From IMG/VR virus record IMGVR_UViG_3300010403_000705, positions 310,001 to 374,000 of that record: a DNA stretch of 64,000 nucleotides; one strand, given 5' to 3'. Positions within the stretch are counted from its first letter, which is position 1. Each line of letters starts with the position of its first letter. Under the pieces are notes generated by a model, which had not been told where the DNA came from, did not search any database, and saw only the letters and a list, made by a program, of their open reading frames with translations. The position numbers were made by a program, and so were the translations under genes. Positions 6,123 through 28,645 of the stretch are shown piece after piece.

Positions 6123-6353
6123 TCAAATGCCGTGATAGTTGTTGAGGTTTTATCTTCCGTGCGACTTGCACAGCCGTGCCTGGGAAGCATGAAACTATCT
6201 TATGACATAACTGAAATGTTATGATGTTAATGATGGCAACATTCTAGAATGGAAGTTTATTCTTCTTTGTTTCTAGAAAACAGACCATTTTTATTATTGG
6301 CGATGTCTTCGTACCTCTGCCAACATAAGTCATCACACGGATAAAACATTTGA
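6123..6353 (+). ncRNA. Putative structured non-coding RNA upstream of the tRNA-Val-like gene
   Basis: ORF-free gap; closing helices TCAAATG/CATTTGA and CCGTG/CACGG; internal stems GATAGTT/AACTATC, CTTCC/GGAAG, TTCTAGAA pair, TTGGC/GCCAA. Confidence 0.45.
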
Positions 6354-6550
6354 ATTGATAGGTCTTCCCATCACTTTAGAATCGGTTCTTGCATCATATG
6401 ATGCGTTTCTTACGAAACAATAATTCATAGATAAAAATAGAATAATTACTAAATTGATGTATGTGAAGAATAGGGATAGAGTTCCAAGTTAATCTGGTAT
6501 ACTCTATACGCTTTGTATTTTGGTTAGTTACTTAATCATATTTTTATTAT

Positions 6551-6752
6551 GTACCTTTAGCTTAAAAGACAATACCGACGCATTATAATTCTTTGTATTT
6601 TCTCTGCAAAGAGACGTAGCATTTTAACCTCTCCCTCATAAGAGATAATGTTGAATGGTGACGTACATCGTTGATTATAGACTTCTGGTATTAGGACGAG
6701 CACCCTTCTAACACAAGGGAGGTTGAGGGTTCGAGCCCCTCAAGGTACACCA
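6551..6752 (+). tRNA. tRNA-Val(AAC) with ~125-nt structured insertion in the D-loop
   Basis: Acceptor GTACCTT/AAGGTAC, A73, encoded CCA; D stem GCTT/GAGC; anticodon arm CCCTT-CTAACAC-AAGGG; T arm GAGGG-TTCGAGC-CCCTC; the D-loop spans 6564-6697. Confidence 0.8.
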
Positions 6753-7121
6753 AATTGAAACGGAGAGACATTATGATTAGCGAACCAGGTAATGTTCATA
6801 CTGTGTTTTTGAAGTTACAATATTTTTTTCCAGATGATATTTGTATGGGCTGGCTGCATGCAGCCATAGAAGAATTTGATGCTAATGAAGATCTTATTAA
6901 GGACTTAATACATAAGATCAACCGTAAAGATTGGCCAGGAAAAATAGAGGCTAAGAAGTTTCTTCGCCACTTAAATGATGTCTTCTAAATCAGAGATGCT
7001 GCAAACTCTGAATTTTTAATTACTGAATACAATACATTTAATGGCAAGTGCATTCGCTGTAAAAATAAGTAGCTCTAGTCTGAGCTATGTTAACAAACAA
7101 CCAATAAGAAAGAGGAATTAG

Positions 7122-7448
7122 ATGGCAACGAAATTTATGTATCTGCGAGCAACACGTGATTCTCAACCTGTGGGATGTATGGCTTTTGATTCGGATGAGC
7201 GTGGTGTTCGATATCAAATTGCAGTTTTGAATCCAGTAGATACTTTTGATCGCACGAGAGGTCGAAGTATCGCAGAAGCGCGTCTACAAAAAAATCCCAT
7301 CAGAGTTGAGTTTCCAGAAGCTAGTGTTGTTGAGCTATCAAACTGGGATGTTCTCAGCACTTTGATGAGTCACCTAGCAGCCAGCAAGAGCGCCCCATCC
7401 CGAGCTGTACGAACTGCTCGCCATTGGCTAATTGCTCATACCAACTAA
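7122..7448 (+). CDS. Hypothetical protein
   Basis: ORF with GAGG RBS; DTFDRTRGRSIA motif of a kind seen in phage proteins. Confidence 0.55.
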   Translation: MATKFMYLRATRDSQPVGCMAFDSDERGVRYQIAVLNPVDTFDRTRGRSIAEARLQKNPIRVEFPEASVVELSNWDVLSTLMSHLAASKSAPSRAVRTARHWLIAHTN

Positions 7449-8015
7449 GATATGAAGAAGTATTTTTTAATTGGTGGCATACCATATAGGTCGTACACTG
7501 GTACTGGCACATTTGTTGGATTAAAAGTTGTTGGTCAGTATGATTCAATTGAAGAAGTAGAGACGGCGGTTAAGCTTCATTATGAAGAGTGTGGAGGTCT
7601 ATTAATGGTATTAGACTCTACTACTGGTCAAGAATTAGTTGAAAATTCTCAGGTATAGAAGAAAGGTTATATTTCATATGTCACATCATGGTGGTAAAGG
7701 ATATCCACATACCGCACAGATTCGGTCAGAGCGCCGCGATCGTGCTATTGCAGTTACCGCAGAAAGCGGGTATAGTAAATTAACGACTGAGGAAAAGTTG
7801 AAGCGAGTTCTTGCTTTTGTTTCCGTGCCTGGTAATGGTAAAGCAGAGAAGCAACTAGCGAAGCTTCAACTTCAATTGAAGAAAGACAAGGAACCAAAAC
7901 CTGTTAAAAACAAAGAAGTAGAAGCGCCGCTAGTAGTGTCTAAAAAGACGGATGATAATCATAACTATCAGGTCGAGCAAGCGTATAATAAGCGCAGTCA
8001 TAAGGTGCGTAAATA

Positions 8016-8282
8016 ATGCTATTCATGATTATTGAAACATTTAAAGGTGGTAACCCAAAACCTGTATATGAGAGATTTAAGCAGCGAGGGCGCCTTGCGC
8101 CTGAAGGCTTAACGTATGTCTCAAGTTGGGTGTCAGATAAGGGTACTGTGTGTTATCAAATCATGGAATGCGCAGACATTAATTTGATTCATCAATGGAT
8201 TGAAAAATGGAATGACCTGGTAGAATTCGAAGTCATCCCAGTAGTAACTTCTATTGAGGCGGCGAAACTTTTTTCTGCCTAG
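8016..8282 (+). CDS. DUF3303-family protein
   Basis: MLFMIIETFK...VYERF...GR..PEGL.YVSSWV...CYQIME...W.DLVEFEVIPV. Confidence 0.8.
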   Translation: MLFMIIETFKGGNPKPVYERFKQRGRLAPEGLTYVSSWVSDKGTVCYQIMECADINLIHQWIEKWNDLVEFEVIPVVTSIEAAKLFSA

Positions 8283-8314
8283 ATATAATAATTTGGCGTC
8301 ACAGCAAATATTCG

Positions 8315-8548
8315 GCAATGCCATTGGGCGAGATGCTGATTGATGGTAATTACTTGGATTATCATCATCTGTGGCTTTGGGCTTTCTGTAACCGTCGATA
8401 CGGGTGAAGAAAGTATGGTAAACCCGCAAGGGACCGATCTGCATAAAAAAGTATAGTGGCGAGGCACGTTGTCGAGAATGTGTCATAAGAGGGTGCACTG
8501 TGCGCATCAGTTATATGACTGGATAATGATGATACCCATTAACATTGC
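8315..8548 (+). ncRNA. Putative structured non-coding RNA upstream of a tRNA-like gene
   Basis: Closing helix GCAATG..TGGG / CCCA..CATTGC; hairpins GATGGTAAT/ATTATCATC, CCC-GCAA-GGG (GNRA), CAGTTA/TGACTG; GC higher than flanks. Confidence 0.45.
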
Positions 8549-8569
8549 TTTTTTAGAGATACCAAGATA

Positions 8570-8761
8570 GCTCCGTTCGCTGAGCGGTGAAAGCTTCGGA
8601 AATATTGATGTATGTGTTTAAGTTCGATTCTGTGTAAGCGTTGATTGAATTCTGTCCAAAGGAATTCATGTCGCTGAATGGGTGGTTGTGGAGGAGAATA
8701 GAGTCGGCGCATCTGATATGTCCGGGGAACTAAGTGCAGAGTTTGATTCTCTGCCGGAGCC
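8570..8761 (+). ncRNA. tRNA-like RNA with a 120-nt structured domain replacing the anticodon loop
   Basis: Acceptor GCTCCG/CGGAGC; D arm GCT-GAGCGGTGAA-AGC; anticodon stem TCGGA(8596-8600)/TCCGG(8721-8725); T arm CAGAG-TTTGATT-CTCTG; ends C-CTA. Confidence 0.7.
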
Positions 8762-9429
8762 CTATTTGCTAAAAGAAATATAACATTTATGCATTTTGAA
8801 TATTTTGATCGTTACGCTTTATGTAAACTTTTCATTGAAAAAGAATCACCACATACATCCTATGAAAATATAGGATTTGTAATTAAAAGAGGTGAGAGTT
8901 TATTTGTAAGTCTAGCTCATGGTAGAAATAAAAATTCATTGGTAAGTTTAAGCGATCCTTCTTTTATTTCTGAAGGAAGGAAATTGGACCATGAAATTAT
9001 CCATGGTTGGGCTGTCCTTGTAAGTTAATGTTAATATGGAACCTACTTTTTGGTGGAACTATGATTTATTTCGAGTATCACAATCTTCAAGAAAACTAAT
9101 AGAGCAAGCAATTCTTGAAGGAACAATGAATTTAACTCACAATGTTAAACCAAAAATTGTGATGAATACATTCGAAGTTCTATATGATGTTGTGGTGCAT
9201 AAGAACGGAAGTCATCCTGGTTGGGTGAGTATCTCTTTGTTTAGATGTATGGAATGTAAATTATTCCTTAATCAACTTAAATGTTGGAGATGTTCTCAAA
9301 CTTCCCATCAATCTCACTCTTAATCATGGTATACATGTAAGACATGCAATAGTGATTCTAGCAAAATTCTGGCACGTATCGAATCAAATAATGACTCCTA
9401 AATTCGTGTGGTGGTCGCCCACGACGATA

Positions 9430-9582
9430 TGTGCCAAGAGCTACATAAAGTTTCTAAGCCGTGTGGGTTCGAATCCCACTCTATACTAGTGTGGTATAGA
9501 TGGCAGGAAAAATAAAAGGGAGACGCTAAGATCATGGTGATCTTTGGTACGAAACTGATGTAGCATATTAGGGAGAGGCACA
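9430..9582 (+). ncRNA. Circularly permuted tRNA-like RNA (Y RNA/YrlA-like architecture)
   Basis: Order is T arm (GTGGG-TTCGAAT-CCCAC), acceptor stem closed by a loop (TCTATAC-TAGTGTG-GTATAGA), D arm, anticodon-like hairpin; 5' and 3' ends pair (TGTGCC/GGCACA, GCTACAT/ATGTAGC, GTTTC/GAAAC, GCC/GGT). Confidence 0.75.
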
Positions 9583-9770
9583 ATGAATCATTATCACTTT
9601 GCTTCTCCCAAAATTTTATATAATAATTTATGATTAAATTATTACTGTATTTGATTGGTAGAAGTCCTATACTATCTTCATTGTGGATAACAGTATATTT
9701 TTTTCTACTAAAATTGCGCAGGAAAAACCGGATTCGATCAAAACGTGAATCCTTTACCAAGAATAAACAA

Positions 9771-10397
9771 ATGAGTAAATATCCTATTAGATATCTTCCT
9801 GTTCCAGTCCGCGAAGCATTTACCCATAAGTTGTTAGGTGATGGTTACGTTAATATTTTACCTTATCAAGTAAAAATTCGTGGAGAAAAAGTATATACCT
9901 ATTATTCTCCGCCTAAAAATAATTGTACTACTTTTGTAGTAGAAGTAAATTTAGAAACAAAAGAATGTATAGTTCACACAGGTGAATATGGCGGGCAATA
10001 CGCTGAGCGTCTTCCAGATCGAGATAAAAAACAGCGTCCACTTGATAAAGGAAAAGCTATTATTAAGGGATATGTAGTTTCTAGTGGAAGAGCGTCCAAT
10101 TATCTTGCAGATGTGGAAGTATTATTTCATCCATCTCAAACTTTGAAACCTCTTCCAGAAGTAAAAATTGATGAAAGAGAGCGTCGGATTTTGTTTTGTT
10201 TTGGATCTCTGAAAGAAGGATTAGCCAGGCGTGAAGCTCTTCATCGTTTAAATGTATCTAAACCAGAACTTGAAGTTCTAGTCAATAGAGGTCTACTGAA
10301 GAAGATTGGTAATAGTCATGGTTTGACTATGATTGCTGAAGCAAATCGTCTTCCTCGCCCTGTCCACGGCGAAAAAGTAATTGTTGATCAATGGTAA
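9771..10397 (+). CDS. Hypothetical protein, paralog of downstream ORF, possible C-terminal winged helix
   Basis: KYPIRYLP...YTYY...HP...DERERRILFCFGSLKEG aligned by eye with the 10437 ORF; ATG at 9771 preferred. Confidence 0.6.
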   Translation: MSKYPIRYLPVPVREAFTHKLLGDGYVNILPYQVKIRGEKVYTYYSPPKNNCTTFVVEVNLETKECIVHTGEYGGQYAERLPDRDKKQRPLDKGKAIIKGYVVSSGRASNYLADVEVLFHPSQTLKPLPEVKIDERERRILFCFGSLKEGLARREALHRLNVSKPELEVLVNRGLLKKIGNSHGLTMIAEANRLPRPVHGEKVIVDQW

Positions 10398-10436
10398 ATT
10401 ATAATAAATAGTGTATTGAGAAAAGTGTCATAGACA

Positions 10437-11093
10437 ATGAAATATCCTATTCTTAGACTGCCCAAGCCAATTGCAGCCGCTCTTGAGTCAGAAATGCTGC
10501 GACGTCGTTATCATATACCTCATACTATCTCGGTCACTCCCAGCACCTCATACACTTATTATATGAAAGGTAGATCCAATAAAATTGGATGTGTGATTGA
10601 AGTATCTTTGCTTCTAAAGAAAAAAATAGATCCTACTGTACAACAAGGTCGTTTGCAATTTGAGAAAAGAGGATATGTTTTGGATTATATGCCTCTGTGG
10701 GGAGGATGGAATGGAGATATATCCTCTCATATTGGAGCAGTTAATTCAGACAAAACTATACGTATTTTGAATCCTGGAAATGCGGTTATTAAGTGTTACG
10801 TTGATAACCAAACACTATTTGCGGGAGGTGAAGTAATATTGCATCCTACAGATATGCCGCCGGCAATCTCAGAAGTTAGATTGTCAGATCGTGAACGTCT
10901 TATTGTGTTTATTTTTGGCAAACTAAAAGCAGGACCTGAGAGATTTTTAACTTTAGAAAAATTTAAAGTTTCTCAAGAAGAAATCAATAATTTAGTCAAA
11001 AGAAAAGTTATCAAACCTACTAAAAATGGATATGTAATCACTGTTACAGGTTTGGCTGCTCGATCTGATAATCCTAAAATAGATAGATGGTAA
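10437..11093 (+). CDS. Hypothetical protein, paralog of upstream ORF
   Basis: KYPILRLP...YTYY...HP...SDRERLIVFIFGKLKAG; both end D-x-W. Confidence 0.6.
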   Translation: MKYPILRLPKPIAAALESEMLRRRYHIPHTISVTPSTSYTYYMKGRSNKIGCVIEVSLLLKKKIDPTVQQGRLQFEKRGYVLDYMPLWGGWNGDISSHIGAVNSDKTIRILNPGNAVIKCYVDNQTLFAGGEVILHPTDMPPAISEVRLSDRERLIVFIFGKLKAGPERFLTLEKFKVSQEEINNLVKRKVIKPTKNGYVITVTGLAARSDNPKIDRW

Positions 11094-11952
11094 TATTATA
11101 TGAAGCGTATTTTAATGATAGATGATACTTATCGCAACCTAGTAGATGCGTTGGTAGAATTAGAGGTTCTATTAACCATCGAAAAATCTTCAGATGATAA
11201 AGTAAAAAGACTACTTTCCATAATTAAGTTAGCACAAGATGTTAATGTTATAGAACAAGGATAAGATCATGTCTGATAATGCTAAGCAAGATCCTCGTAC
11301 GACACATTTATTACCGCCCGCAAATCTTCATGTATCCGATCGTGATTGGTATTCATCACCTGCACCCACCCCATCATTGAGCGGTCCTCCTACAGTACAG
11401 TCTAGTAAATCTTCTACAAGCTATCTAGCTGCTTATGGAAATAATTATCGTAGCTATAATTCATTAGTTAACCAAAACTATTGGAGTAGATATATAGGTA
11501 TTTTTACAAAGGATGGTAAGAGTAAATTCGGGAAGATTATTACTCAACTTTCATTAGAAGATTGGGCAAAAGAAAATGGATATACCATCGTCAAATTTAC
11601 TAGACTTTTTGGTTCTATAAATCCTGAGAAAGAAAAGACAGAATTTAGTACCGGAACTTCTATGGACGATGTATGAAGTCAACAATTGATGATAGTGATA
11701 TAGGGACATATTCAACTCCACAAGAGTGGCTCGAATTATATAAGGGCACTGCTCCAGAATGTGCTCAAATGGCAACTTGGTTAGCTATCGAAATGGCGGG
11801 ACGACACATTCAATTAAAAATGGATCATGGTTTAGATTCCAGTGAATGGTCTTTATATTGCCAGGTCCTACCATCAATTCCAGGTCTTAAGACAGATCCG
11901 AACAGGAAAGAAATTCCTCGTCTTGTTAAAAGATATTTATCGGAGTATTAAG

Positions 11953-12519
11953 ATGAGAGAGACTATTTTAGTTGGGTCTACTAGTCCACATAAAGTTTTT
12001 GGTACGGATCTTGCTACTAAAACTATACCATTTCTTGATGCGTATGTAACAGGTTCTTCTACTAACAGTGGTGTTAGTGATCAACCGTATGGTATAAAAG
12101 AAATTTTATTAGGAGCCCATAATCGCGCCAATGCAGTTTGGAGATTAGGGATAGTAGCTATTGGAATTGAAAGTGGATTGATAGAAATACCTAATCTTTC
12201 ATTCTGGAAGAGATTATTAGCTAGAATTCCATGTTTAGGCGATAGATATCGCAAACAGATTATTTATTGCTGTATGACAGTAGTTGTAGCTATTGATCAT
12301 AGTGGTAATGTACATTATGCGATTTCCAATGGAATGCAATTCCCCACAGATGCTGTGTTAACTGCGCGGCAACAAAATACTACTGTAGGTAAAGTTCTAG
12401 CTGCTAAGTATGGTGGAGATCATACTGATCCTCGAAGAATAATATCTTCAGGATTCGTTTGTCGTCAGGATTCAATCACTGAAGCAGTCAAATTAGTTCT
12501 TTTTAGAATTTTTAAATAG
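11953..12519 (+). CDS. yjjX: YjjX/DUF84-like non-canonical purine NTPase (ITPase/XTPase)
   Basis: VGSTSPHKV, SGVSDQP.G..E...GA.NRA, GIESG, TVG. Confidence 0.75.
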   Translation: MRETILVGSTSPHKVFGTDLATKTIPFLDAYVTGSSTNSGVSDQPYGIKEILLGAHNRANAVWRLGIVAIGIESGLIEIPNLSFWKRLLARIPCLGDRYRKQIIYCCMTVVVAIDHSGNVHYAISNGMQFPTDAVLTARQQNTTVGKVLAAKYGGDHTDPRRIISSGFVCRQDSITEAVKLVLFRIFK

Positions 12520-12543
12520 CATAACTATAATAGGATAAATTTC

Positions 12544-13218
12544 ATGAAGGCGATTTTTGAGGGTAGCGCAACAGATATAAGAGCCGTTTTGGTGGACCAA
12601 AACGCTAGTTATAATGAGGGTCGCGCTCAACTTCGAATTGAAAATCTTGAGGCAGAGCTGGTTCTTTTAAAAGAACAAACAGCTTTTTACAAAAAAGAAA
12701 TAGAGGATGCAGATCGTTTAGTAGCTTCGCACGAAAAAAAGATGACAGAAACACTTAATGTCTGTCATGCTACTAAAGCTGAATTAGTAGTCAAAAATTC
12801 TCGTATTGCTGCTTTAGAAGCTGAGGTACAAAAATTACAATATGAAGTACGCTCACTACGTGGAAAAACTCTAGAGTCATCAAAAATCCCAACATTAAGC
12901 CCAATGCAAGAAGCAGAAGTTGAAGCAGTGTTTCAAGACACGCTTCGTGAGCATAGCATCAAGCCATTGGTATTTGCATCTGCTGCACAAGAGGGTCGAG
13001 AGATAACGGCAGAATCATTAGTGACAACTATTTTTACTGTGTTAGGAAATGGTAATAGAGTAGGCGCTATTAAAGAAATTAGAGCAGCTACTGGTATAAC
13101 CTTATTTAAAGCGCGTGATTTAATAGATAATGCTTTACGACGCTTTGGATGTAACACTGATGAAAGAGGAATGATATTATCCGCTCCATCAATTACTATC
13201 TCTGAAAAGAATACTTAA
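12544..13218 (+). CDS. Coiled-coil protein with C-terminal ribosomal protein bL12 CTD-like domain
   Basis: Heptad-rich N-terminal half; NRVGAIKEIRAATGITLFKARDLID matches the L7/L12 CTD pattern KI.AIK.VR..TGLGLKEAK.LVD. Confidence 0.65.
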   Translation: MKAIFEGSATDIRAVLVDQNASYNEGRAQLRIENLEAELVLLKEQTAFYKKEIEDADRLVASHEKKMTETLNVCHATKAELVVKNSRIAALEAEVQKLQYEVRSLRGKTLESSKIPTLSPMQEAEVEAVFQDTLREHSIKPLVFASAAQEGREITAESLVTTIFTVLGNGNRVGAIKEIRAATGITLFKARDLIDNALRRFGCNTDERGMILSAPSITISEKNT

Positions 13219-13251: not shown

Positions 13252-13559
13252 TTGGTGGCAGGTATTAGTTATTGTAAAGATGTTGGCATATGTAAACTAT
13301 AGCGCCGGCATTAAGCAATATGTTCGTGCGGTAACATACAGAAATTCTCTAGCTTTGAGAAAAACAATATAGTTACATTTAGCAGCCAGTAAACTCATGA
13401 CTTAGTTTATCAGTAATGCTAAGTGTTTAATCTAGGAGATGAAAGGGTATTTCTGTCTAGTCATATGTAAGAAGAAATGAGTCCAAAATAAAATACGTTG
13501 CATCAATTGAGATGATGATATTTAATATCATGCAGGTGCGATATTTGCCAACGTACCAA
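13252..13559 (+). ncRNA. Putative structured non-coding RNA abutting a tRNA-like gene
   Basis: ORF-free; closing helix TTGGT-GGCAGGTAT / ATATTTGCC..ACCAA; internal stems ATGTAA..CTATA/TATAGTTACAT, TATGTT/AACATA, TTCTC/GAGAA, TAAACT/AGTTTA. Confidence 0.45.
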
Positions 13560-13561
13560 AT

Positions 13562-13651
13562 GCCGAATTAGTACAATGAAAATGTCTATGCGCAAAGACT
13601 AAGTACGCCACTCATAAAGCGGTAATTTGGGTTTGATTCCCGAGTTCGGCT
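13562..13651 (+). tRNA. Aberrant tRNA-like gene with expanded D-loop; anticodon ambiguous (CTCATAA present, possibly Met/Ile2-derived)
   Basis: Acceptor GCCGAAT/GTTCGGC; D stem GTAC/GTAC with 28-nt loop containing a GTCT/AGAC hairpin; imperfect anticodon stem; T arm TTGGG-TTTGATT-CCCGA; ends T-CTA. Confidence 0.6.
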
Positions 13652-13739: not shown

Positions 13740-14393
13740 GTGAGCACTGAGAATACAACCAAGACTCGACAAATGACACCCAAGTGGTTCTTATCCCTTG
13801 CCTCTAGGAATGGAAGTAAGAGTGCGGAAAACTTTCTTGCCACTCACAGAAATTGGCTGGAGAATAGTGTGTTAGCGAGTGAGGTAGCCCCTATCTTGGC
13901 TCAGATTGATTCAAGGAATTTATTTCCCACTCCTGGTCTTGACGCTATTTTACATGTTGTTCTTGGTTATATGATGACTGAGGATCTGATTAAAGCACAA
14001 GGACAATTAAAACGTTCATCAGAAGTAAAAACGGATAAGCCTTATGTAGCTAGGATTATGACTAGTGAAGGACAGCCAGTTACAGTTCTTGATGAAAAGA
14101 AGAACCCCAAACATCTTCATGCATCTTTTGAACATTTGCAAGAAGCTGATCGTTGGTGCCAACGGCGTCTTAATGAGGGTACTGAAGGTTGGTATGGAGA
14201 AATTACCTGGACAAAGGTTATCACTAAGAGTGGTACGCCGATGGTTACCAAGGTAAATCGAAATGATGCTATTCAAGCTTTATCTACTAAAACAAAAAGC
14301 CCCTTCATGCATTACAATAAGGTAGGCGGCGGCGGTCGTTTGAGTAATCGTATGTCGGTTGGTCAAACTCACGTACGATTTTCTCGTGGTTAA
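13740..14393 (+). CDS. Hypothetical protein
   Basis: 217-aa ORF, GTG start with AAGGA RBS. Confidence 0.55.
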   Translation: MSTENTTKTRQMTPKWFLSLASRNGSKSAENFLATHRNWLENSVLASEVAPILAQIDSRNLFPTPGLDAILHVVLGYMMTEDLIKAQGQLKRSSEVKTDKPYVARIMTSEGQPVTVLDEKKNPKHLHASFEHLQEADRWCQRRLNEGTEGWYGEITWTKVITKSGTPMVTKVNRNDAIQALSTKTKSPFMHYNKVGGGGRLSNRMSVGQTHVRFSRG

Positions 14394-21012: not shown

Positions 21013-21567
21013 ATGAACATTTTTATTATTGGACCCTCACGTAGCGCCAAGACTCCTATTGCAAATATAGTAGCTGAAAGATTTAATTTCACACGTATTT
21101 CTGCTTCTGATTGGGTACGTAGCATTTTTGTTTCCTCTAAACCCGTGGTAACAATTGAAGATAAACAGAGAGCTCTAGAAGAAATTACTAGGTTCTCTCA
21201 AGATCTTTTAAAAGAAGACCCTAATCGCTGCATCAATTTTATTAAAGATAAATATCCATGGCATCAATTAGAGTCGCAAAGTTTTTCTGATACATACGTA
21301 TTAGAAGGGTTTAGAAATCCACGCGATTTTTTGACTCTTTTTAATCCGAGATATGATAAGGTAATATTTCTTACTTACCCATCAAGCCCACTCCAGCCTC
21401 TTACTTTTGAAACAGAAGGACTCATTATCATCGAACAAGCAATTGATTGGTTTATTAAATGTGAGATGATGTTATCTTCTTCCAAAATAAAGTTCATCAT
21501 TGGTGACTTTTCTGAAGTAGAAGCAATTGCTAAATTGATAATCGAATGGATTAGTAGTCATGCTTAG
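21013..21567 (+). CDS. P-loop nucleotide-kinase-like protein
   Basis: N-terminal IFIIGPSRSAKT, ISASD, EGFR. Confidence 0.6.
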   Translation: MNIFIIGPSRSAKTPIANIVAERFNFTRISASDWVRSIFVSSKPVVTIEDKQRALEEITRFSQDLLKEDPNRCINFIKDKYPWHQLESQSFSDTYVLEGFRNPRDFLTLFNPRYDKVIFLTYPSSPLQPLTFETEGLIIIEQAIDWFIKCEMMLSSSKIKFIIGDFSEVEAIAKLIIEWISSHA

Positions 21568-21818
21568 CAAACCTATAGTGATTATTATTAATATGGACTA
21601 TAAGAATTATTATAGCCATCGTATTTTTAACTCATCATCGGAAGCTTTCTCCTTTGCTGAGGGTATGGAAGAAGCTTGGAAAATTAGCCACGGACATTAT
21701 AACTGTTGGAAACCACTTGTTCTTTGCTGCCGCTTTGATTATGAGGAATGGCACGACTTAGGCTATCCAGGTAAAGAAATAATTTTAAAATTCTTAGATT
21801 GAAAATAGGATTATTATA

Positions 21819-22334
21819 ATGTTTGTGCATGCAAACCTACCTGTCATTACAGCATATCTTCGTGAAGACGTACTTTATAATATGGATGTAACAAAAGCAG
21901 ATAGCTATGTTGCCTGTACTATTATTGCGGTAAGTAGTTATCCGGGTTCAGTTCCTACTTTTCAAGTTGTGGTAGAAGGCGAAAGCCTATTTTCTTATAT
22001 ACCCCCTCACCTTATAATAAGTAAGAAAAACAAAAATGATAATCCATTGTATAGTCTTTCAGATTTAGTTTATCATAATTGTCCAGCAGCAGAATTTTCT
22101 GTCAATATATTAGATTTCTTAATCGATAAGAAACTACAAGTTTTTCTACGTTCTCAAAAAACTTGGCTTGAAGGAAACTATCAGTTTACTATGGACTGGT
22201 ACTTGGGAAATGATTTGCTTCATTGTGTTACATTAAACAATGGACAATTTGCTTTTATCCCACAACATAAACTTTCGTTAGGTAAACAAGAGTTTAAGGC
22301 ATATCAGAAATTGCGTCAAGACTGGAAAGTATGA
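21819..22334 (+). CDS. Conserved-type phage hypothetical protein
   Basis: ANLP...YLRE..LY, Y.FT.DW, L.NGQFA..P pattern. Confidence 0.55.
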   Translation: MFVHANLPVITAYLREDVLYNMDVTKADSYVACTIIAVSSYPGSVPTFQVVVEGESLFSYIPPHLIISKKNKNDNPLYSLSDLVYHNCPAAEFSVNILDFLIDKKLQVFLRSQKTWLEGNYQFTMDWYLGNDLLHCVTLNNGQFAFIPQHKLSLGKQEFKAYQKLRQDWKV

Positions 22335-22674
22335 GTAGTCTGTGTAAATTTTTTCATCTTAAGAAAAGAAGCATGCCTTATAGTCCATATAGAATTATGT
22401 TTTCTAAAGTAGAAAAAAGATCTTACTGGGCAGTTATTAAGGAACATGTATCAATGTATATGATTAAAACAATTATGTATTTTTGTGGCACCATTCTCTC
22501 TATCATTGGATCATTAGCAGCTATCGTTTGTATGGGTGTACTATATGATTATGGTGACCACAAAAACGTTGGAATTAGAAGTGCTGGTGCAGTTGTATGT
22601 GTGCTATTAGCAATAGGTTTTGGTATTTGCGCATGCCTAGTAATAACTAAATGGCTAGATAGAATGGATTAAAT

Positions 22675-23664
22675 ATGCCCGTAATTAATTGGACTGAAAT
22701 TACATCTTTTCATAACATTAACAAATATGCTAAAAGCGTTCCAGAGATACTTAACCATTATCCATCGGTAATGTATCGGGCTAAAATTAAGCTACATGGC
22801 AATAATGCGGCAATTCAAATTCATTCTGATGATCGCGTTTTGGCTCAAAGTAGAACTACAGAGCTTAGCCCAGGTAATGATTTAGCTGGATTTGCGAAAT
22901 GGGTAGAAGAAAATGCAAGTGCCTGGCGTAATAATGCTTCAGGTCTTATTGTATTTGGTGAGTGGTGTGGGCATGGTATCCAAAGTGGAACAGCTCTCAA
23001 TAACTTACATGAAAAGATTTTTGCTGTTTTTGCTGCACGATGGTTAGATGACGAGGATTCTCTAATCGTAGATCCAGAAGAATTACAAGAGCTTCTTAAA
23101 GGAAAAGACATTCCTGGAATGTATATACTTCCATGGCACAATGATCCAATTGAAATAGACTGGTGCGGCAATGAAAGCTCATTAGATGTTAAGGCTTCGT
23201 TAATTAATGAATGGGTGTTAGCTATTGAACAAAATGATCCCTGGGTAGAGAAGACCTTTAACATTAAAGGTACTGGAGAGGGATTGGTATTCTACCCTAT
23301 ATCTAAACAACACTTGGGTTATAAGAATTATTGTAATTTAGTTTTTAAAGCCAAAGGTGAGGCTCATCGCGTTGTTAAGACTAAGACATCTGTACAGGTA
23401 AATCCAGAAGCTGTGGAAAATAGCAATTTATTTGTAGATATGGTTCTTACCACAGCTCGATTAGAGCAAGGTGTACGTTCTGCTAGTGTAGATGGATCGC
23501 TAACATTTAGTAATAAATTTATTGGAAAATTTATAAATTGGATTCTAAATGATGTGCAAAAAGAAACAACAGCAGAACTAGAAGCCTCTGGATTGCAGTG
23601 GAAACAAGTACAAAAATTACTAGGAGATAAGTCACGTAATTGGTATCTAAGTAAAATGAAATGA
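22675..23664 (+). CDS. RNA ligase, Rnl2 family
   Basis: Motif I KLHGNN, QSR, FGEWCG.GIQ, FAVF, GEGLV, FKAK. Confidence 0.8.
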   Translation: MPVINWTEITSFHNINKYAKSVPEILNHYPSVMYRAKIKLHGNNAAIQIHSDDRVLAQSRTTELSPGNDLAGFAKWVEENASAWRNNASGLIVFGEWCGHGIQSGTALNNLHEKIFAVFAARWLDDEDSLIVDPEELQELLKGKDIPGMYILPWHNDPIEIDWCGNESSLDVKASLINEWVLAIEQNDPWVEKTFNIKGTGEGLVFYPISKQHLGYKNYCNLVFKAKGEAHRVVKTKTSVQVNPEAVENSNLFVDMVLTTARLEQGVRSASVDGSLTFSNKFIGKFINWILNDVQKETTAELEASGLQWKQVQKLLGDKSRNWYLSKMK

Positions 23665-23759
23665 TTAAGTGTATTATATACTTGCTTACAATAATATTAG
23701 ATCTGTAATACCCATCAATCTTATATGGTATGTTAGAAGTTGAAAATAGGAAAAACTAA

Positions 23760-24413
23760 ATGAGCGAATCTATAATAGATAGATGCCAACGACATACAAT
23801 TGCTGTACGCCATACTTTGCTTGGTAAGAACTGGTACAGTGCTTTGGAAGCCATGGAATTTGCGAAAGGATTTCATCAAGGCACCAGAAAAGACAGAATA
23901 ACTCCAGAGTTCTCTCATCAAATAGAGATAGCGGGATTTCTTTTAACGTTATCATCAGCTTTACTATTTCCAGAAGAAACCATTACGGTTTCGTTCTTAC
24001 ATGATTGTCCGGAGGATTACGATATAGGATTCGAAGAACTGGAATCTAAGTTTGGTGCTAAAGTATCTAACGCTACCAAACTACTTACTAAAACTCATCG
24101 AGGGCATAAGCGTAATCCGGATACATATTTCATTGATATGATAAGCGATCCGATTGCTTCTGTTGTTAAGGGAGCCGACAGAATCAATAATCAAAGCACT
24201 ATTGTTGGGGTGTTTTCTAGAGAGAAACAAAATTCTTATATAACAGAAACAGTCCAACAGATCATTCCTATGATCAAATCTGCTAGGAAGAGCTGTCCTA
24301 GGCAATTCAATGTATATCAAAATATTCTTTTTGTGCTGAGAAGCCAACTTGATATGATTCGTGCAATCCATGCCGCACAAGATTCAATGAAAGAAAATAA
24401 AAATGCCGACTAA
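23760..24413 (+). CDS. HD-domain hydrolase, RelA/SpoT-hydrolase (Mesh1/SAH)-like
   Basis: FA...H.G.RKD..TP...H, LHDCPED, LLTK, VKGADRINN. Confidence 0.8.
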   Translation: MSESIIDRCQRHTIAVRHTLLGKNWYSALEAMEFAKGFHQGTRKDRITPEFSHQIEIAGFLLTLSSALLFPEETITVSFLHDCPEDYDIGFEELESKFGAKVSNATKLLTKTHRGHKRNPDTYFIDMISDPIASVVKGADRINNQSTIVGVFSREKQNSYITETVQQIIPMIKSARKSCPRQFNVYQNILFVLRSQLDMIRAIHAAQDSMKENKNAD

Positions 24414-24882
24414 TGCAATTACAACATGTTTGAGGGAACTTCAAAAGTTACTTGGTGTTGAAAAGATCAAAATTACTTATGACTATGATGGTAGAAATTT
24501 TCCACAAAAACCAAATGAATGGTTGTACAATGAGGTTGTTTTGGAGCAAGGAAATCCAACTCCATTTACCCTTGTAAATGAAGAGGCTGGATTAATAATT
24601 GCTCGATGGAATTTACAAGAAATGCCTTCATGTTGTGGCATTGCTATCATGTCAGAGTTTTTTGTTAATCCAAGGAGCAGAAAAACTGGAGTTGGCAAAG
24701 AGATTAGTAAACTCATTCGTTTAATCGCGAAAAAAATGAATTATAGAATCTTATTAGGAACTGATGTAATTACTAATACGTATCATCAACAGTCTTTAAA
24801 AAGAGATAAGTTTAAGAGCTTACTAAAATTTCGCAATAGAAATACTGGTAATAGAATCAATATTTCTGCATCTGTACTTTGA
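24403..24882 (+). CDS. GNAT-fold acetyltransferase-like protein
   Basis: FFVNPRSRKTGVGK acetyl-CoA-binding motif A. Confidence 0.6.
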   Translation: MPTNAITTCLRELQKLLGVEKIKITYDYDGRNFPQKPNEWLYNEVVLEQGNPTPFTLVNEEAGLIIARWNLQEMPSCCGIAIMSEFFVNPRSRKTGVGKEISKLIRLIAKKMNYRILLGTDVITNTYHQQSLKRDKFKSLLKFRNRNTGNRINISASVL

Positions 24883-25556
24883 TAATAAGGAGACTTTATG
24901 TCTGATGATTTATTTGTTCTAGAAGTGAGAAAGTTTCAACCAACTTATAAAATGGTTTTGCTCACTATACATAGTGTTTTAGTGAGTGGTTTTTCATTCT
25001 TATGCTATCCAATTACTAAATTGGTAGAAGTAGTAGGCGAGACTTCTACGTTTGAATTTTACAATAAAAAGTAAAAATAAGATGTCAAGATATAGCCATG
25101 CATTAAGGGATCGAACAGCTACGGCTCTTACCGATTTTGCTACAGGATTGCTTAGAATGTCGGCGTTATTGCCAGGCATGTCGTGTAATATAGTATTATC
25201 TTATGATGATGCGCCCTCTTATACAGATCTAAGAGAAGTAGTTTTGTATGTAGAAAGAGATGACAATGGAATCTATTTCTTCAATGAAACTGAAATCGGT
25301 GACTTAGAACAAGCTACCATGATTTATTCTTTAGCTTGTGCTGAATTAATGAAGACCATTGCAACTGATGAATGGCGAGAAGATCATTTTGAAGAATTAA
25401 GTCTGGCGGCTTTGCCCAAATCAAGTGATGATAATACTGAGATAAGTTTGGAATCATTAGATGAGCTTACTAATCTTCTGAATGAAGAAGATAGCGATAA
25501 TAGTGATGGTGATGAATTAGAAATTATTGAGTATTATAAACCAGAAATTTAAGTAG

Positions 25557-25599
25557 AGTGTGCTTGCTACTCGTGCCAAGGGTAGCAAGCACACTTTTT
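25557..25599 (+). terminator. Intrinsic terminator
   Basis: AGTGTGCTTGCTAC/GTAGCAAGCACACT stem followed by T-run. Confidence 0.8.
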
Positions 25600-25926
25600 G
25601 TTTTTCAGTTTTAGATGGTATGTATAATGCATCATGCAATTAACATGCCAAACTATATCACCTCAAATATTACAGTGTCACTGTAAAACCTCCCATCATC
25701 TAATATGTTGTACTAAAGTAGTGCTGACAAGTTGAAAGCTAGAAGCTGAAACGAATCAGCAAAGTTAGCTAGTTAAAGTAACCCATCGGTTAACGTTAAC
25801 CTAGCTAAGTTAGATAATGAAACAAGGAATAACACCTTGCAAATCCCAAAAGAGATGGAGTAATTCTTCTTCCATTAAAAGAGGGATAATAACAGAACCC
25901 ATAGGGTTCAACATGGAGAGATAAAC

Positions 25927-26382
25927 ATGAGTGACGGTACTTTTTCTTACAATACGCTGAGTGCTTTTGTGGTTCGTGGTGAAGATGGTCGCCTTGATAG
26001 CGATGCGACCGTGGCGAAGTTCGTTGATCGTCTTGCTGAGTGGGAATCGGCAGTTGAGAAGGAGGATTCAGCTATCGCGGCGGCGGTACACGAGGTATTT
26101 GATACCAAGATTGTTAAAGGTGGATCGCTAAATATGGATGCCATCGTAACTTTTGCAATCCCTGCGCTGAATCCAAATTCGGACAACTTTGCGATTCTTC
26201 GTGATCGTATTAAGGATTGGGTTCGTACCAATGCCGATCAGCCTGCTAAGAAGTCCAAGGACGGAAAGACTGTTCTGGTTGAAGCTGAAGCGCCACGTAC
26301 TCGCGCATTCTCTATCGCTAAGGGTAAGGGTGGCGGCGTGCGTCGTTGGGCTGATGTTGCAGTTAAGCCTGACAGCGAGTGA
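25927..26382 (+). CDS. Hypothetical protein, possible DNA-binding (wing-like KGKGGG)
   Basis: GGAG RBS, long structured leader, C-terminal FSIAKGKGGGV similar to VEIKRGAHGGI in the 51583 ORF. Confidence 0.55.
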   Translation: MSDGTFSYNTLSAFVVRGEDGRLDSDATVAKFVDRLAEWESAVEKEDSAIAAAVHEVFDTKIVKGGSLNMDAIVTFAIPALNPNSDNFAILRDRIKDWVRTNADQPAKKSKDGKTVLVEAEAPRTRAFSIAKGKGGGVRRWADVAVKPDSE

Positions 26383-26400
26383 TCATTAGCGGTTCGTTAT

Positions 26401-26438
26401 GATGAGGGGAGGCTGTATTAATACAGCCTCCCCTCATC
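26401..26438. terminator. Perfect 38-bp palindrome
   Basis: GATGAGGGGAGGCTGTATT|AATACAGCCTCCCCTCATC then TGTTTT. Confidence 0.7.
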
Positions 26439-27385
26439 TGTTTTAAGATCATGCAAACATTGAAATGTAATTCATATATGTTTAATCTATCTAAAGACTC
26501 AATTGCTACTGGTACAGCCATGTTGGTTATGGCTCCTTGTATAGCTATTGTAGGGGCAGTAAAGAATCCAAACAGAGCTGAAGCTCTCTCAAATGCTCTA
26601 TTAGTTTTTAGGGCAGGAATTTGTTTGTTGTTTAAAAGAACGATCAAGTAGGATCTTGGATACATAAAATGAAGAATGAATTTTATAATGTTGGTGACTT
26701 GGTGTATAAATCACCTGTCTATTCTGCTGCCTATCCAGCATGGAAAGTGGATAAGGGAGTAGTGCTATCTGTTAAAAAAAGATTGATTAGTGACCAATCT
26801 CTAGGAGCAATTGATCGAGCCTCATATAGAAGTAGATATGGTCACCAAGACAGGTATCCTATTTTTGAACTATTTATATCAACTAATCAAGGCAATTATT
26901 TAGTTAGTCAATTTGGATTTAATAAGGATGGCATTAACAATGAGTAGCAAGAATAATTCTGAGTTGGAAAAAGAGTTTCAAGAGTCACTGCGTACATTTG
27001 GTGTGACTATCCAACGTAAATTACAACTCGCTAATAAAGCGCTTGTAGATGCGGATGCCCATCCAGCAGGTGCTCGAGCATTAAATGAGGCATGTGCATT
27101 AGCTGATGAACATGGCATTCCTTTTCATAGTAAGGTGATTGCCATAGGTAATCATGTTGCTTCCTTGGAAAATAATTATGTTCCAGATTCTTATTTTGAA
27201 AAATTTAATAGTCTAGATCCTAATGAAGTGCAAGAGCTAACAAGCGTAGCTGCATTTGCCTTAAGCAAAGGAACTGTAGAAGATGTAGATGAAGATTGGG
27301 ATGAATCTGAAGAATGGGATTCTTCTGATGAAGGTGATGGTTGGGCACCTTCAAATGTATGCTGGTAAGATGAAAGGAAATTTCA

Positions 27386-28306
27386 ATGATTCTAATTGGT
27401 TCGCGTGCTCTTATGATAAGAGCACCTTATATCCTTAATAGATCGCCTAAAGATTTTGATTGGATATGCACAGAGAAAGAATTTGATCATTGGATAACTG
27501 AACAATCATTTAAAGCACAACCTACAGATGTTTCTGTTATATCTGAGAATAAAAGAATTGTGCGAGGTGCAGTAAATTGTGAGTTTGAAATTATACGACC
27601 AGGGACTAGTTCTGAGCTTTTGCAAAGCTTAGTCTTTGAAGATTCAGAAACAATAGAGACTCCATTTGGATTGGTCCCTAGTCTTGATTTGTTATTTACA
27701 ATTAAATGCTCCCACAGGTATTTAAAGAACTCACCACATTTTTGGAAGAACTTGAGCGACTATCATTTAATGAAAAGAGTCGGTGCTCAAGTAAAAGATA
27801 ATCTTTCAAGTTTTCTTAAACTTAGAGAGAAAGAAACATATACTTATACTCATCCAAAATTAAATACTTCTAGAAAGAATTTTTTTAGTGATGATCAAGT
27901 ATCTTATGTATATGACCATGATTCTATTCACGAAGCAGTAAAACATTTAGATCGCCCAGCATATTCATTTTTCCAAAAAGATGGAGAAGAAGTAGCGTGC
28001 GATAAGAATAAATTTTTTGCTTGTTCTCGTGAAGTACAATTGTATTCTGTGGTAGAGGAGTCTGCTGTATTAGCAATTGAACGCAGTTTGGTTCCTTTTC
28101 CTGGTAAGTGGTCCCCAGAATATGCATGGAGGTTCGCTTTCTCCAAAGTATGCACAAGTATATCTTCTGGATGGTGGAGAGCTTTTGCTTATGATAATGC
28201 TTTGGATTGTCTGAGATTATATCCAGTTGATTATTGGAGTAAATTTCAGAAAGGATTATCTGATGGCTTAGTTAAGCCATTTAACCCATCCGCAAAAGCT
28301 TCATAG
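27386..28306 (+). CDS. Putative phage nucleotidyltransferase-fold protein
   Basis: N-terminal LIGSRA...PKDFD (GS + DxD), YDHDSIHE. Confidence 0.55.
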   Translation: MILIGSRALMIRAPYILNRSPKDFDWICTEKEFDHWITEQSFKAQPTDVSVISENKRIVRGAVNCEFEIIRPGTSSELLQSLVFEDSETIETPFGLVPSLDLLFTIKCSHRYLKNSPHFWKNLSDYHLMKRVGAQVKDNLSSFLKLREKETYTYTHPKLNTSRKNFFSDDQVSYVYDHDSIHEAVKHLDRPAYSFFQKDGEEVACDKNKFFACSREVQLYSVVEESAVLAIERSLVPFPGKWSPEYAWRFAFSKVCTSISSGWWRAFAYDNALDCLRLYPVDYWSKFQKGLSDGLVKPFNPSAKAS

Positions 28307-28354
28307 GCTGGAGTATAAAGATTTTTCAAGAGCCTTAGACTCTTGAAGCAGACT

Positions 28355-28645
28355 TGTTTTATTAAGGCGTTGACGGGCGGTAATGTATATTATTGCCACG
28401 AGCCAAGATGAAATAGGAAATGAATTTTTATAAAATTCATTCAATTATTAGTAGTTATTATTAAGTAGATATGGAATGTATTAATACAAAGTAGTTGGGA
28501 ATATTAAATTAACCTATTATAGAGTGTTAATACATGGTCTTACTCAGTATAGTAAATTCACGTGCGACCATGACTGCCAGGGAAATGGGTGAATGAATTA
28601 CATTGAGCAATACCAAACGTCAAGTTAGTTTAAGATAGTAAAACA
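28355..28645 (+). ncRNA. Putative structured non-coding RNA with possible pseudoknot
   Basis: Closing helices TGTTTTATT/AGTAAAACA and TTGACG/CGTCAA; hairpins GGCGGTAAT/ATTATTGCC, AATGAATTTT/AAAATTCATT, ATGTATTAA/TTAATACAT; CATGGTC/GACCATG crosses the ATTCAC/GTGAAT stem. Confidence 0.5.

What the first reader, a model, noticed from the sequence alone, without database searches (positions are those of the whole stretch)
6123..28645. Four 230-310 nt structured non-coding regions, each upstream of an aberrant tRNA
Seen: ORF-free segments 6123-6353, 8315-8548, 13252-13559 and 28355-28645 each have end-to-end closing helices and several internal hairpins. They are followed by tRNA-like genes at 6551, 8570, 13562 and 28676, with gaps of about 200, 21, 2 and 30 nt. 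Smaller hairpins also precede the others (9404-9424, 52529-52560, 63443-63519). Established: large phage ncRNAs such as GOLLD and ROOL often sit beside tRNAs. Inference: the tRNA-like units may act as RNase P processing signals that release novel ncRNAs, which would explain their relaxed anticodons.
Basis: partly seen in the sequence, partly recalled or inferred. Interest (0 to 1): 0.72.

Follow-up and report, generated by a model that had tools for sequence, protein, structure and literature searches.

The report
Megaphage structured RNAs fused to tRNA-like modules
A 433 kb soil megaphage carries several large non-coding RNAs in no known family, three of them conserved in related phages with compensating base-pair changes, each joined to or followed by a tRNA-like module; what they do is unknown.

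Summary
The four segments are ORF-free in every frame and under any stop-codon reassignment. All seven tRNA-like units exist, but ARAGORN and Rfam accept only two as tRNAs. Single-sequence folding is weak evidence (z -1.5 to -3.4). Comparison with relatives is strong. E1, E2 and E3 are conserved in 3, 7 and 4 related phage genomes or contigs. They show 42, 32 and 17 compensatory base pairs, and E2 reaches about 74% nucleotide identity where flanking proteins are 24-69% identical.

- E1 is about 435 nt (6100-6535) and runs almost up to its tRNA.
- The closing helices described for E2 and E3 are not conserved.
- E2's tRNA-like unit is an integral, co-conserved domain.
- E3 ends in its own acceptor/T-type minihelix with an encoded CCA, and in one relative no tRNA-like gene follows it.

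E4 has no homolog, but it shares a GUGCGAC...GCCWGGGAA module with E1. No element matches any Rfam family. E1-E3 share no detectable sequence similarity, and the E2a model finds no paralog.

My best reading is new phage ncRNA families that use tRNA mimicry for processing and stability. The phage also encodes Ro60 and RtcB. The RNase P punctuation idea is plausible but untested, because no RNA data exist.

The parts
6100..6535 (+). Outer helix 6114-6121 with 6490-6497; inner helix 6124-6129 with 6347-6352.
   Evidence: Alignment with G001 and L051 gives 200 predicted pairs, 42 of them compensatory. My slide control gives 50 against 3-10. The G001 and L051 versions hold two extra T-arm modules.
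6140..6205 (+). Module in E1: a stem closing a loop that begins GUGCGAC and ends GCCUGGGAA. E4 has the same module.
   Evidence: The pattern GTGCGACN{5,15}GCCWGGGAA matches only 6159-6186 and 28562-28584 in the window, with 0.00 expected. The pattern was chosen after seeing both sites. The closing stem covaries with G001.
6551..6752 (+). T1: tRNA-Val(AAC)-like gene with an extra arm of about 110-125 nt (roughly 6572-6685) inserted in the D loop. CCA is encoded.
   Evidence: Acceptor, D, anticodon and T stems covary across 3 genomes, and the anticodon loop CUAACAC is invariant. Removing the arm in silico gives ARAGORN tRNA-Val(aac) in 101 of 440 deletions. ARAGORN calls no other tRNA-Val in the genome. 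Rfam tRNA scores 21.6 bits on the 3' part only.
8296..8567 (+). E2a: hairpin P0 (GUCACAG/CUGUGGC) holding a variable insertion (8311-8366), followed by a conserved multi-branch core (8367-8567) with a GNRA hairpin and a GUAA/GUGA internal loop.
   Evidence: Conserved in G001, L044, L045, L046, L048 and L051. Covariance model R1 scores 201.6 bits on the window copy and finds nothing else in G000 or G002-G005.
8570..8763 (+). T2: tRNA-like domain of the E2 RNA. It has an acceptor-type helix (GCUCCG/CGGAGC), a D-like hairpin, a long extended arm in place of the anticodon arm with invariant GCUGAAUGGG and GGAGAAUAG, and a T-like hairpin.
   Evidence: It is conserved together with E2a: 108 predicted pairs, 32 compensatory. 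The two-sequence test gave 20 compensatory pairs against 0-4 in slid controls. No Rfam or ARAGORN tRNA call. No consistent anticodon appears after in-silico trimming.
9388..9548 (+). T5: tRNA-like RNA with a canonical T arm followed directly by a closed 'acceptor' hairpin (UCUAUAC-loop-GUAUAGA). This is the topology described for YrlA-type Y RNAs.
   Evidence: Seven genomes, 38 predicted pairs, 18 compensatory. It is the only convincing element with this topology in the genome; the four other hits of the scan have weak A/T-rich stems.
13262..13558 (+). E3: structured non-coding RNA. Its 3' part (13494-13558) is an acceptor-type helix (UACGUUG/CAACGUA) plus a T-like hairpin, ending in an encoded CCA.
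   Evidence: Conserved in G001, L044 and L051. 67 predicted pairs, 17 compensatory; slide control 26 against 1-5. The 3' sequence UGCCAACGUACCA is invariant in the three aligned sequences.
13562..13650 (+). T3: tRNA-like unit with an extra hairpin in the D loop and an unstable anticodon loop. It starts 3 nt after E3's CCA.
   Evidence: Acceptor and T stems covary with G001. The anticodon-like loop is 7 nt here and 6 nt in G001. T3 is absent after E3 in L044. In G001 an extra tRNA-like unit lies between E3 and T3; L051 shows a gap of similar size there.
28355..28645 (+). E4: AT-rich ORF-free segment. It carries the GUGCGAC...GCCAGGGAA module (about 28540-28620) upstream of tRNA-Leu(UAA).
   Evidence: z = -3.37. 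No homolog was found: the syntenic gap in G001 holds two small ORFs instead. It shares the module with E1.
28675..28749 (+). T4: tRNA-Leu(UAA), 75 nt, without the long variable arm usual for tRNA-Leu.
   Evidence: ARAGORN call and Rfam tRNA at 49.6 bits; fold.
52563..52648 (+). T6: aberrant tRNA-like unit with a UAA anticodon loop, about 370 nt upstream of the RtcB gene (53022-54557).
   Evidence: Rfam tRNA 25.7 bits, below the cut-off. T arm and acceptor found. RtcB matches phrog_1075 at 2.4e-67.
63523..63607 (+). T7: canonical long-arm tRNA-Leu(UAA).
   Evidence: ARAGORN call and Rfam tRNA at 52.2 bits.

Best explanation
The window is part of a 433 kb soil megaphage. The segments encode stable, highly structured non-coding RNAs transcribed from the + strand. 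There are at least three unrelated families (E1, E2, E3) plus E4, which is lineage-specific and shares one module with E1.

Each RNA is built as a large 5' domain joined to a tRNA-type 3' module. That module has an acceptor-like helix stacked on a T arm, while its D and anticodon regions are replaced or expanded.

Inferred mechanism: the tRNA-like module gives these RNAs the biogenesis and protection of a tRNA. That would include end definition by RNase P and 3' trimming or CCA addition, T-loop recognition, and resistance to exonucleases. It may also recruit tRNA-binding partners. The 5' domain would carry the still unknown effector function.

Separate tRNA-like genes that follow directly (T3 after E3; extra units in G001 and probably L051) can additionally act as punctuation that sets the 3' end of the upstream RNA.

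Shown here: conservation, covariation, strand, domain boundaries, the tRNA-like architecture, and the absence of any Rfam match.
Inferred: transcription, processing and function.
For: - No ORFs in any frame or code.
- E2 is 74% identical over 371 nt between phages whose flanking proteins are 24-69% identical.
- E1, E2, E3 and T5 are conserved in 3, 7, 4 and 8 genomes or contigs.
- Compensatory pairs: E2 32 of 108, E3 17 of 67, E1 42 of 200, T5 18 of 38. Slid-partner controls are far lower: 38 against 7-10, 26 against 1-5, 50 against 3-10, 32 against 9-16.
- 11-15% of the predicted paired cells are G-U. These would be A-C mismatches on the other strand, which points to the + strand.
- Canonical T loops and covarying acceptor helices are present.
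- E2 and its tRNA-like domain keep a fixed junction of 1-2 nt in all six aligned copies.
- E3 ends in an invariant minihelix plus CCA.
- No Rfam family matches, even at E up to 10.
- The phage and its relatives G001, G002 and G005 encode Ro60, and the window phage encodes RtcB. In bacteria, tRNA-mimicking Y RNAs are encoded next to Ro60 (PMC4201824).
Against: - There is no transcript evidence at all. Only one DNA run, a soil metagenome, holds the sequence.
- Single-sequence folding is barely better than shuffles for E2 and E3.
- The consensus structures were chosen by RNAalifold, which rewards covariation, and they rest on only 3-7 partly close sequences.
- E4 has no homolog.
- The promoter and terminator scans are at chance level.
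- The function of the 5' domains is unknown.
- Whether the tRNA-like part stays attached or is cut off is not resolved.
Confidence: 0.6

Rival explanations
1. The tRNA-like units are only RNase P (and RNase Z) cleavage signals. They release independent ncRNAs and are then discarded, which would explain their degenerate anticodons.
For: T3 starts 3 nt after the CCA end of E3, and T2 starts 1-2 nt after the invariant ACCRAGA of E2a. T2 and T3 have no stable anticodon loop. tRNA-linked processing of neighbouring stable RNAs is established biology, for example T4 species 1 and 2 RNAs and mascRNA/MALAT1 (my own knowledge).
Against: E3 exists without a downstream tRNA-like unit in L044. T2's long arm holds invariant motifs and covarying helices, which a disposable signal would not need. 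T1 keeps a conserved anticodon loop.
Confidence: 0.25
2. The tRNA-like units are working tRNAs whose insertions are introns at unusual positions. An endonuclease would remove them and the phage RtcB would rejoin the exons. The upstream E segments would be long leaders of the precursors.
For: T1 becomes an ARAGORN tRNA-Val(AAC) when the D-loop arm is removed, and ARAGORN calls no other tRNA-Val in the genome. RtcB is encoded in the window. Another acceptor-plus-T-arm gene with a 160-nt insertion lies in the main tRNA cluster at G000 407175-407423.
Against: I saw no bulge-helix-bulge motif and identified no splicing endonuclease, though neither was searched for formally. There is no group I intron match. 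After arm removal the D loop would be 12-14 nt, which is longer than usual. T2 and T3 give no consistent anticodon. A leader role does not explain the covariation across E1-E3.
Confidence: 0.15
3. They are Y-RNA-type partners of the phage Ro60 protein, in an RNA surveillance and repair module with RtcB. T5 would be the YrlA equivalent, and the E-plus-tRNA-like RNAs would be larger relatives.
For: Ro60 ortholog at G000 395136-396695: vWA_Ro60 at 6e-18, and full-length similarity to D. radiodurans Rsr (2nvo) at 1.5e-13. It is also present in G001, G002 and G005. T5 has a T arm followed by a closed acceptor hairpin, as described for YrlA (PMC4201824).
Against: The elements lie 58-79 kb from the Ro60 gene, whereas nearly all YrlA candidates lie within 4 kb of it. 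There is no clean GNCGAAN0-1G motif; the best is GACGAU, and it is variable. No D arm follows the acceptor hairpin. The Rfam scans of 5500-29500 and of the Ro60/tRNA-cluster region gave no Y-RNA hit. The E2a model finds nothing in the Ro60-bearing G002 and G005. The complex prediction was not run by the tool.
Confidence: 0.15
4. They are decaying tRNA islands or gene remnants without function.
For: The content is modular and varies between relatives: extra T-arm modules in G001 and L051, E4+T4 present only here, T3 missing in L044.
Against: The nucleotide identity is higher than expected from the flanking coding DNA, and helix-preserving double substitutions are abundant.
Confidence: 0.04

Closest known systems
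GOLLD and ROOL (large ornate phage/prophage ncRNAs near tRNA islands)
   Same: Large, multi-branched ncRNAs encoded by phages beside tRNA genes. GOLLD can carry a tRNA covalently in its linker region.
   Different: No match to either Rfam model. E1-E3 are smaller, at about 300-650 nt including the tRNA-like part. Each belongs to its own family. The attached tRNA-like part is non-canonical. Multimer or nanocage formation is unknown.
Bacterial and phage YrlA-type Y RNAs (tRNA mimics bound by Ro60)
   Same: Non-coding RNAs with a tRNA-like module (T arm, closed acceptor-type hairpin), in a genome that also encodes Ro60 and RtcB (PMC4201824).
   Different: They are not adjacent to the Ro60 gene. 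They lack a clean GNCGAAN0-1G motif and a D arm in the YrlA position. The E RNAs are several times larger than Y RNAs.
tmRNA
   Same: An acceptor helix plus T arm frame with a large structured insertion in place of the anticodon arm, as in T2 and in G000 407175-407423.
   Different: ARAGORN finds the phage's real tmRNA elsewhere (G000 55645-55997) and none here. I saw no tag reading frame and no G3-U70, by eye.
Phage T4 stable RNAs (species 1 and 2, rnaC/rnaD) in the tRNA cluster; mascRNA/MALAT1-type tRNA-like 3' processing
   Same: Stable ncRNAs of unknown function co-encoded with tRNAs and matured by the tRNA-processing machinery (my own knowledge, not tested here).
   Different: Those RNAs are shorter, and no sequence comparison was made. 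Here the tRNA-like part is often an integral, conserved domain.
tRNA genes with non-canonical introns (archaeal BHB introns; group I introns in bacterial tRNAs)
   Same: T1 is a tRNA frame interrupted by about 120 nt.
   Different: The interruption is in the D loop of a phage gene. There is no group I match and I saw no BHB. It may be a permanent extra arm.

Membership tests
Canonical tRNA (Rfam RF00005 / ARAGORN) | Score at or above the 29-bit gathering cut-off, or an ARAGORN cloverleaf call | tested here: not met
   Met only for 28675-28749 (49.6 bits) and 63523-63607 (52.2 bits). T1 scores 21.6 bits and T6 25.7 bits. T2 and T3 get no hit; T5 matches only its T arm, at 14.6 bits. ARAGORN with introns allowed also fails.
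Canonical tRNA | A 7-nt anticodon loop conserved between relatives | tested here: inconclusive
   T1: CUAACAC is invariant in 3 genomes. T3: 7 nt against 6 nt. T2: the arm is extended by about 115 nt.
GOLLD / ROOL | Match to the family covariance model | tested here: not met
   No hit at the gathering score or at E up to 5-10.
Group I intron | Match to RF00028, and flanking exons that form one gene when joined | tested here: not met
   No Rfam hit. The tRNA-like units close on themselves. Flanking ORFs differ between relatives, so no split gene exists.
RNase P RNA | Match to the RNase P models, with P4-forming CR-I and CR-V | tested here: not met
   No Rfam hit, even when 8283-8790 was scanned alone at E up to 10. 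There is only a superficial GGGUGAA / GGUAAACCCGCAAGG resemblance, noted by eye.
tmRNA | ARAGORN or Rfam tmRNA call with a tag peptide | tested here: not met
   No tmRNA in the window. The phage tmRNA is at G000 55645-55997.
YrlA-type Y RNA | Encoded within about 4 kb of the Ro60 gene on the same strand | tested here: not met
   Ro60 lies at G000 395136-396695 on the + strand. T5 is at G000 319388, about 76 kb away, and E1-E4 are 58-79 kb away.
YrlA-type Y RNA | A T stem-loop, then a closed acceptor-like stem-loop, then a D stem-loop | tested here: inconclusive
   For T5, the T arm and the closed hairpin are present and covary. No D arm follows. A hairpin with a GG-containing loop lies 5' instead.
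YrlA-type Y RNA | GNCGAAN0-1G motif near the 5' end | tested here: not met
   The best candidate is GACGAU, and it varies among the 7 sequences.
YrlA-type Y RNA | Binding by Ro60 | not testable with these tools
Enzymatically spliced tRNA intron (BHB type) | Bulge-helix-bulge at the exon-intron borders, and a splicing endonuclease gene | not tested
   Inspected only by eye. RtcB is present, but no endonuclease was identified among the proteins scanned.

The most novel reading that the evidence does not exclude
These are a new class of megaphage RNAs: large ornate effector domains permanently anchored to a tRNA-shaped handle.

The handle would let the phage feed them into tRNA-recognising machinery. 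Candidates are Ro60/RtcB surveillance, CCA addition or even aminoacylation, and possibly the COOH-NH2 ligase, amidoligase and GGACT genes that share the conserved gene neighbourhood.

T1 would then be the first phage tRNA with a protein-spliced intron, or a permanent extra arm, in its D loop.
Probability: 0.12. Interest if true: 0.88.

Novelty: new variant of a known kind. Interest (0 to 1): 0.68.

Why it matters
Huge phages carry large sets of translation-related genes, but very few of their non-coding RNAs are described.

This locus adds at least three conserved structured RNA families of several hundred nucleotides that are absent from Rfam. Each is physically coupled to a tRNA mimic, in a phage clade that also encodes Ro60, and the window phage encodes RtcB as well.

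If the coupling is functional, it gives a defined system for two questions. The first is how phages use the tRNA shape as a general handle for RNA processing, protection or recruitment. The second is why large phage RNAs such as GOLLD and ROOL cluster with tRNAs.

The D-loop-interrupted tRNA-Val(AAC), the only candidate tRNA-Val found in the genome, is a separate testable oddity for tRNA biology.

Tried and rejected
- Hidden ORFs or a reassigned stop codon: rejected. All three stop types occur in every frame, although the phage does have a tRNA(CUA).
- Known RNA families: none found at the gathering score, at E up to 5 over 24 kb, or at E up to 10 on E2 alone. The homologous G001 region also gave nothing.
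- One repeated family: rejected. E1-E4 share no BLAST similarity, and the E2a covariance model finds only itself in the genome. The exception is the module shared by E1 and E4.
- Intron in a protein gene: rejected. The flanking ORFs are not conserved as one gene.
- Wider distribution:
  - The phage database search gave no match.
  - Two IMG/VR pattern scans found only G001.
  - Protein-seeded scans of IMG/VR and the JGI metagenomes found only G001 and the source contig.
  - The E2a model found nothing in G002-G005.
  - The genome contigs pattern scan gave 24 hits, all unrelated; the recurrent ones are conserved protein-coding motifs and the count is about what chance predicts.
- Promoter and terminator scans: at chance level.
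- RNA-seq: no RNA run was listed, and only one DNA run holds the sequence.
- Ro60-T5 complex prediction: not folded by the tool, so it is not evidence either way.
- A possible pairing between AAUGGGU in T2 and ACCCAUU in E2a: dropped, because it is not conserved in G001 (seen by eye in the alignment).

Full report
**Context.** The window is bases 310001-374000 of a 432,844-base virus record. The same sequence lies on a 447.6 kb metagenome contig. The only public run that holds it is a soil metagenome DNA run. All large ORFs are on the + strand and G+C is about 30-41%. ARAGORN finds 42 tRNA genes in the genome, among them a tRNA(CUA), and one tmRNA. The window also encodes an RtcB RNA ligase (53022-54557) and several COOH-NH2 ligase, amidoligase and gamma-glutamyl cyclotransferase genes. 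This is a megaphage.

**Checking the observation.**
- The four segments have no ORF in any of the six frames. Each frame carries TAA, TAG and TGA stops, so a reassigned stop codon does not rescue a gene.
- ARAGORN, with or without introns allowed, and the Rfam tRNA model accept only 28675-28749 and 63523-63607. 6688-6749 and 52571-52644 score below the cut-off.
- Folding each segment alone gives z-scores of -2.28, -1.73, -1.52 and -3.37 against dinucleotide shuffles. On this test alone, only E4 and perhaps E1 stand out.

**Relatives.**
- One 446.5 kb IMG/VR genome, G001, is syntenic with window 5-18 kb. Its proteins are only 24-69% identical to the window's.
- A protein search with the gene at 9630-10397, followed by contig look-ups, gave five useful Logan/NCBI contigs: L044, L045, L046, L048 and L050. 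The gene at 7639-8016 led to an 18 kb JGI contig, L051, which is close to G001.
- These sequences made comparative analysis possible.

**E2 (8296-8763).**
Neighbouring coding DNA gives only short matches.
- Seven genomes or contigs carry E2.
- RNAalifold on six of them predicts 108 pairs, 32 with compensatory double changes.
- On the two-sequence alignment, 20 pairs changed on both sides, against 0-4 when the partners are slid by 1-3 columns. No shuffle reached the observed value.
- On six sequences my slide control gives 38 against 7-10.
- The architecture runs as follows:
  - a 5' hairpin (GUCACAG/CUGUGAC) whose loop holds an insertion of 0 to about 80 nt, depending on the genome;
  - a multi-branch core with a GNRA-capped hairpin and a symmetric GUAA/GUGA internal loop;
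  - the invariant ACCRAGA, then 1-2 nt;
  - a tRNA-shaped domain with an acceptor-type helix, a D-like hairpin, a long arm replacing the anticodon arm (invariant GCUGAAUGGG and GGAGAAUAG), and a T-like hairpin.

**E3 (13262-13558).**
- E3 is conserved in G001, L044 and L051. It has 67 predicted pairs, 17 of them compensatory. The slide control gives 26 against 1-5.
- Its invariant 3' end folds locally. UACGUUG (13494-13500) pairs with CAACGUA (13549-13555) around a T-like hairpin, and CCA follows directly.
- In L044, E3 is followed by the next gene with no tRNA-like unit. In G001 an extra tRNA-like unit lies between E3 and T3, and L051 shows a gap of similar size. The downstream unit is therefore optional.

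**E1 (6100-6535) and T1 (6551-6752).**
- The alignment with G001 and L051 predicts 200 pairs, 42 of them compensatory. The slide control gives 50 against 3-10.
- An outer helix (UUAGAUUA 6114-6121 with UAAUCUGG 6490-6497) covaries with UUGGGUUA/UAACCCGG in the relatives.
- The '200 nt gap' therefore belongs to the structured domain.
- The G001 and L051 versions are about 900 nt long and hold two extra T-arm modules.
- T1 has covarying acceptor, D, anticodon and T stems, an invariant anticodon loop CUAACAC, and an arm of about 110-125 nt emerging from the D loop.
- Deleting that arm in silico makes ARAGORN call tRNA-Val(AAC) in 101 of 440 deletions. A control sweep over E2a gave no tRNA call at all.
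- ARAGORN calls no other tRNA-Val in the genome.

**E4 (28355-28645).** E4 has no homolog. In G001 the same intergenic position holds two small ORFs and no tRNA. E4 does share a module with E1: a stem closing a loop that starts GUGCGAC and ends GCCWGGGAA. The pattern occurs only at these two sites in the window, with 0.00 expected, although it was chosen after seeing both.

**Relations between the elements and to known families.**
- E1-E4 share no BLAST similarity.
- A covariance model of E2a finds only E2a in the whole genome, and nothing in four more distant relatives.
- No Rfam family matches any element. This rules out GOLLD, ROOL, group I introns, RNase P RNA, tmRNA and the Y RNA models as sequence-level memberships.
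- G-U pairs make up 11-15% of the predicted paired cells, which points to + strand RNA.

**Other tRNA-like units.**
- T5 (9388-9548) is conserved in eight genomes or contigs. In the seven aligned copies, 18 of 38 predicted pairs are compensatory.
- T5 has a canonical T arm followed directly by a closed hairpin where the acceptor stem would be. This is the topology described for YrlA-type Y RNAs (PMC4201824). It is the only convincing element of this kind in the genome.
- The phage encodes a full-length Ro60 ortholog at G000 395136-396695. G001, G002 and G005 encode one too.
- Against Y-RNA membership, the RNA lies 76 kb from the Ro60 gene, has no clean GNCGAAN0-1G motif, and has no D arm in the YrlA position.

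**Interpretation.**
- What is shown: a set of conserved, + strand, highly structured non-coding elements from several unrelated families, each ending in or followed by a tRNA-shaped module.
- What I infer: the tRNA shape serves as a handle for processing, stabilisation or recruitment, and the 5' domains carry an unknown function.
It does not explain the co-conserved, motif-rich T2 domain, nor E3 without a downstream unit.
- Splicing of T1 with help from RtcB, and a Ro60-linked role, remain open rivals.
- No RNA data exist for this phage, so transcription and RNA ends are untested.

**Caveats.** The alignments hold only 3-7 sequences, and some of these are close relatives. RNAalifold favours covarying pairs, so the compensatory counts are upper estimates. 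The slide and shuffle controls argue that the signal is real, but they are not a formal covariation test.

Noticed in passing
outside the window: G000:C1:395136-396695 (+); locus L043:3136-4692: The phage encodes a full-length Ro60/Rsr ortholog (vWA_Ro60 6e-18, TROVE 6e-06, PDB 2nvo 1.5e-13). Orthologs are also present in relatives G001, G002 and G005.
   Followed up: partly
window 9388-9548: A conserved tRNA-like RNA with a T arm followed by a closed acceptor-type hairpin, which is the YrlA-like topology. It is the only convincing one in the genome and is present in eight related genomes or contigs.
   Followed up: partly
window 9370-9387 (and upstream of T5 in the relatives): A conserved motif, UGGCACG-N3-4-GAAUCAAAU, precedes T5 in the window, G001, L044, L045 and L046. 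It may be a phage promoter or part of the RNA. E2 likewise starts with the invariant UGGCGUCACAGCA.
   Followed up: no
window 52563-52648 and 53022-54557: An aberrant tRNA-like unit with a UAA anticodon loop (Rfam 25.7 bits) lies about 370 nt upstream of the RtcB RNA ligase gene.
   Followed up: no
window 28675-28749: tRNA-Leu(UAA) is only 75 nt long and lacks the long variable arm of normal tRNA-Leu. The window holds three UAA-anticodon units (28675, 52563, 63523).
   Followed up: no
outside the window: G000:C1:407175-407423: In the main tRNA cluster there is another gene with an acceptor stem, a T arm and CCA, and an insertion of about 160 nt (ARAGORN: Gly-GCC with an intron). Two further tRNA hits of 108-109 nt lie at 403101 and 405230.
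   Followed up: no
outside the window: G000:C1:58637-58710 and 55645-55997: A tRNA with anticodon CUA (a possible amber suppressor) and a tmRNA gene. Several tRNAs are called with A34 anticodons (AAG, ACG, AGG, AUA).
   Followed up: no
window 889-4827, 28851-31686, 34338-35717: A cluster of COOH-NH2 ligase, amidoligase, RimK-like and gamma-glutamyl cyclotransferase genes surrounds the RNA loci. The same neighbourhood (two COOH-NH2 ligases, GGACT, then the E1 block) is kept in L051.
   Followed up: no
L041 about 13890-14005 (G001) and L041 2840-3075: G001 carries extra tRNA-like modules that the window lacks: one between E3 and T3, and two T-arm modules inside its E1 block (the latter also present in L051). 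The modules seem to be gained and lost.
   Followed up: partly
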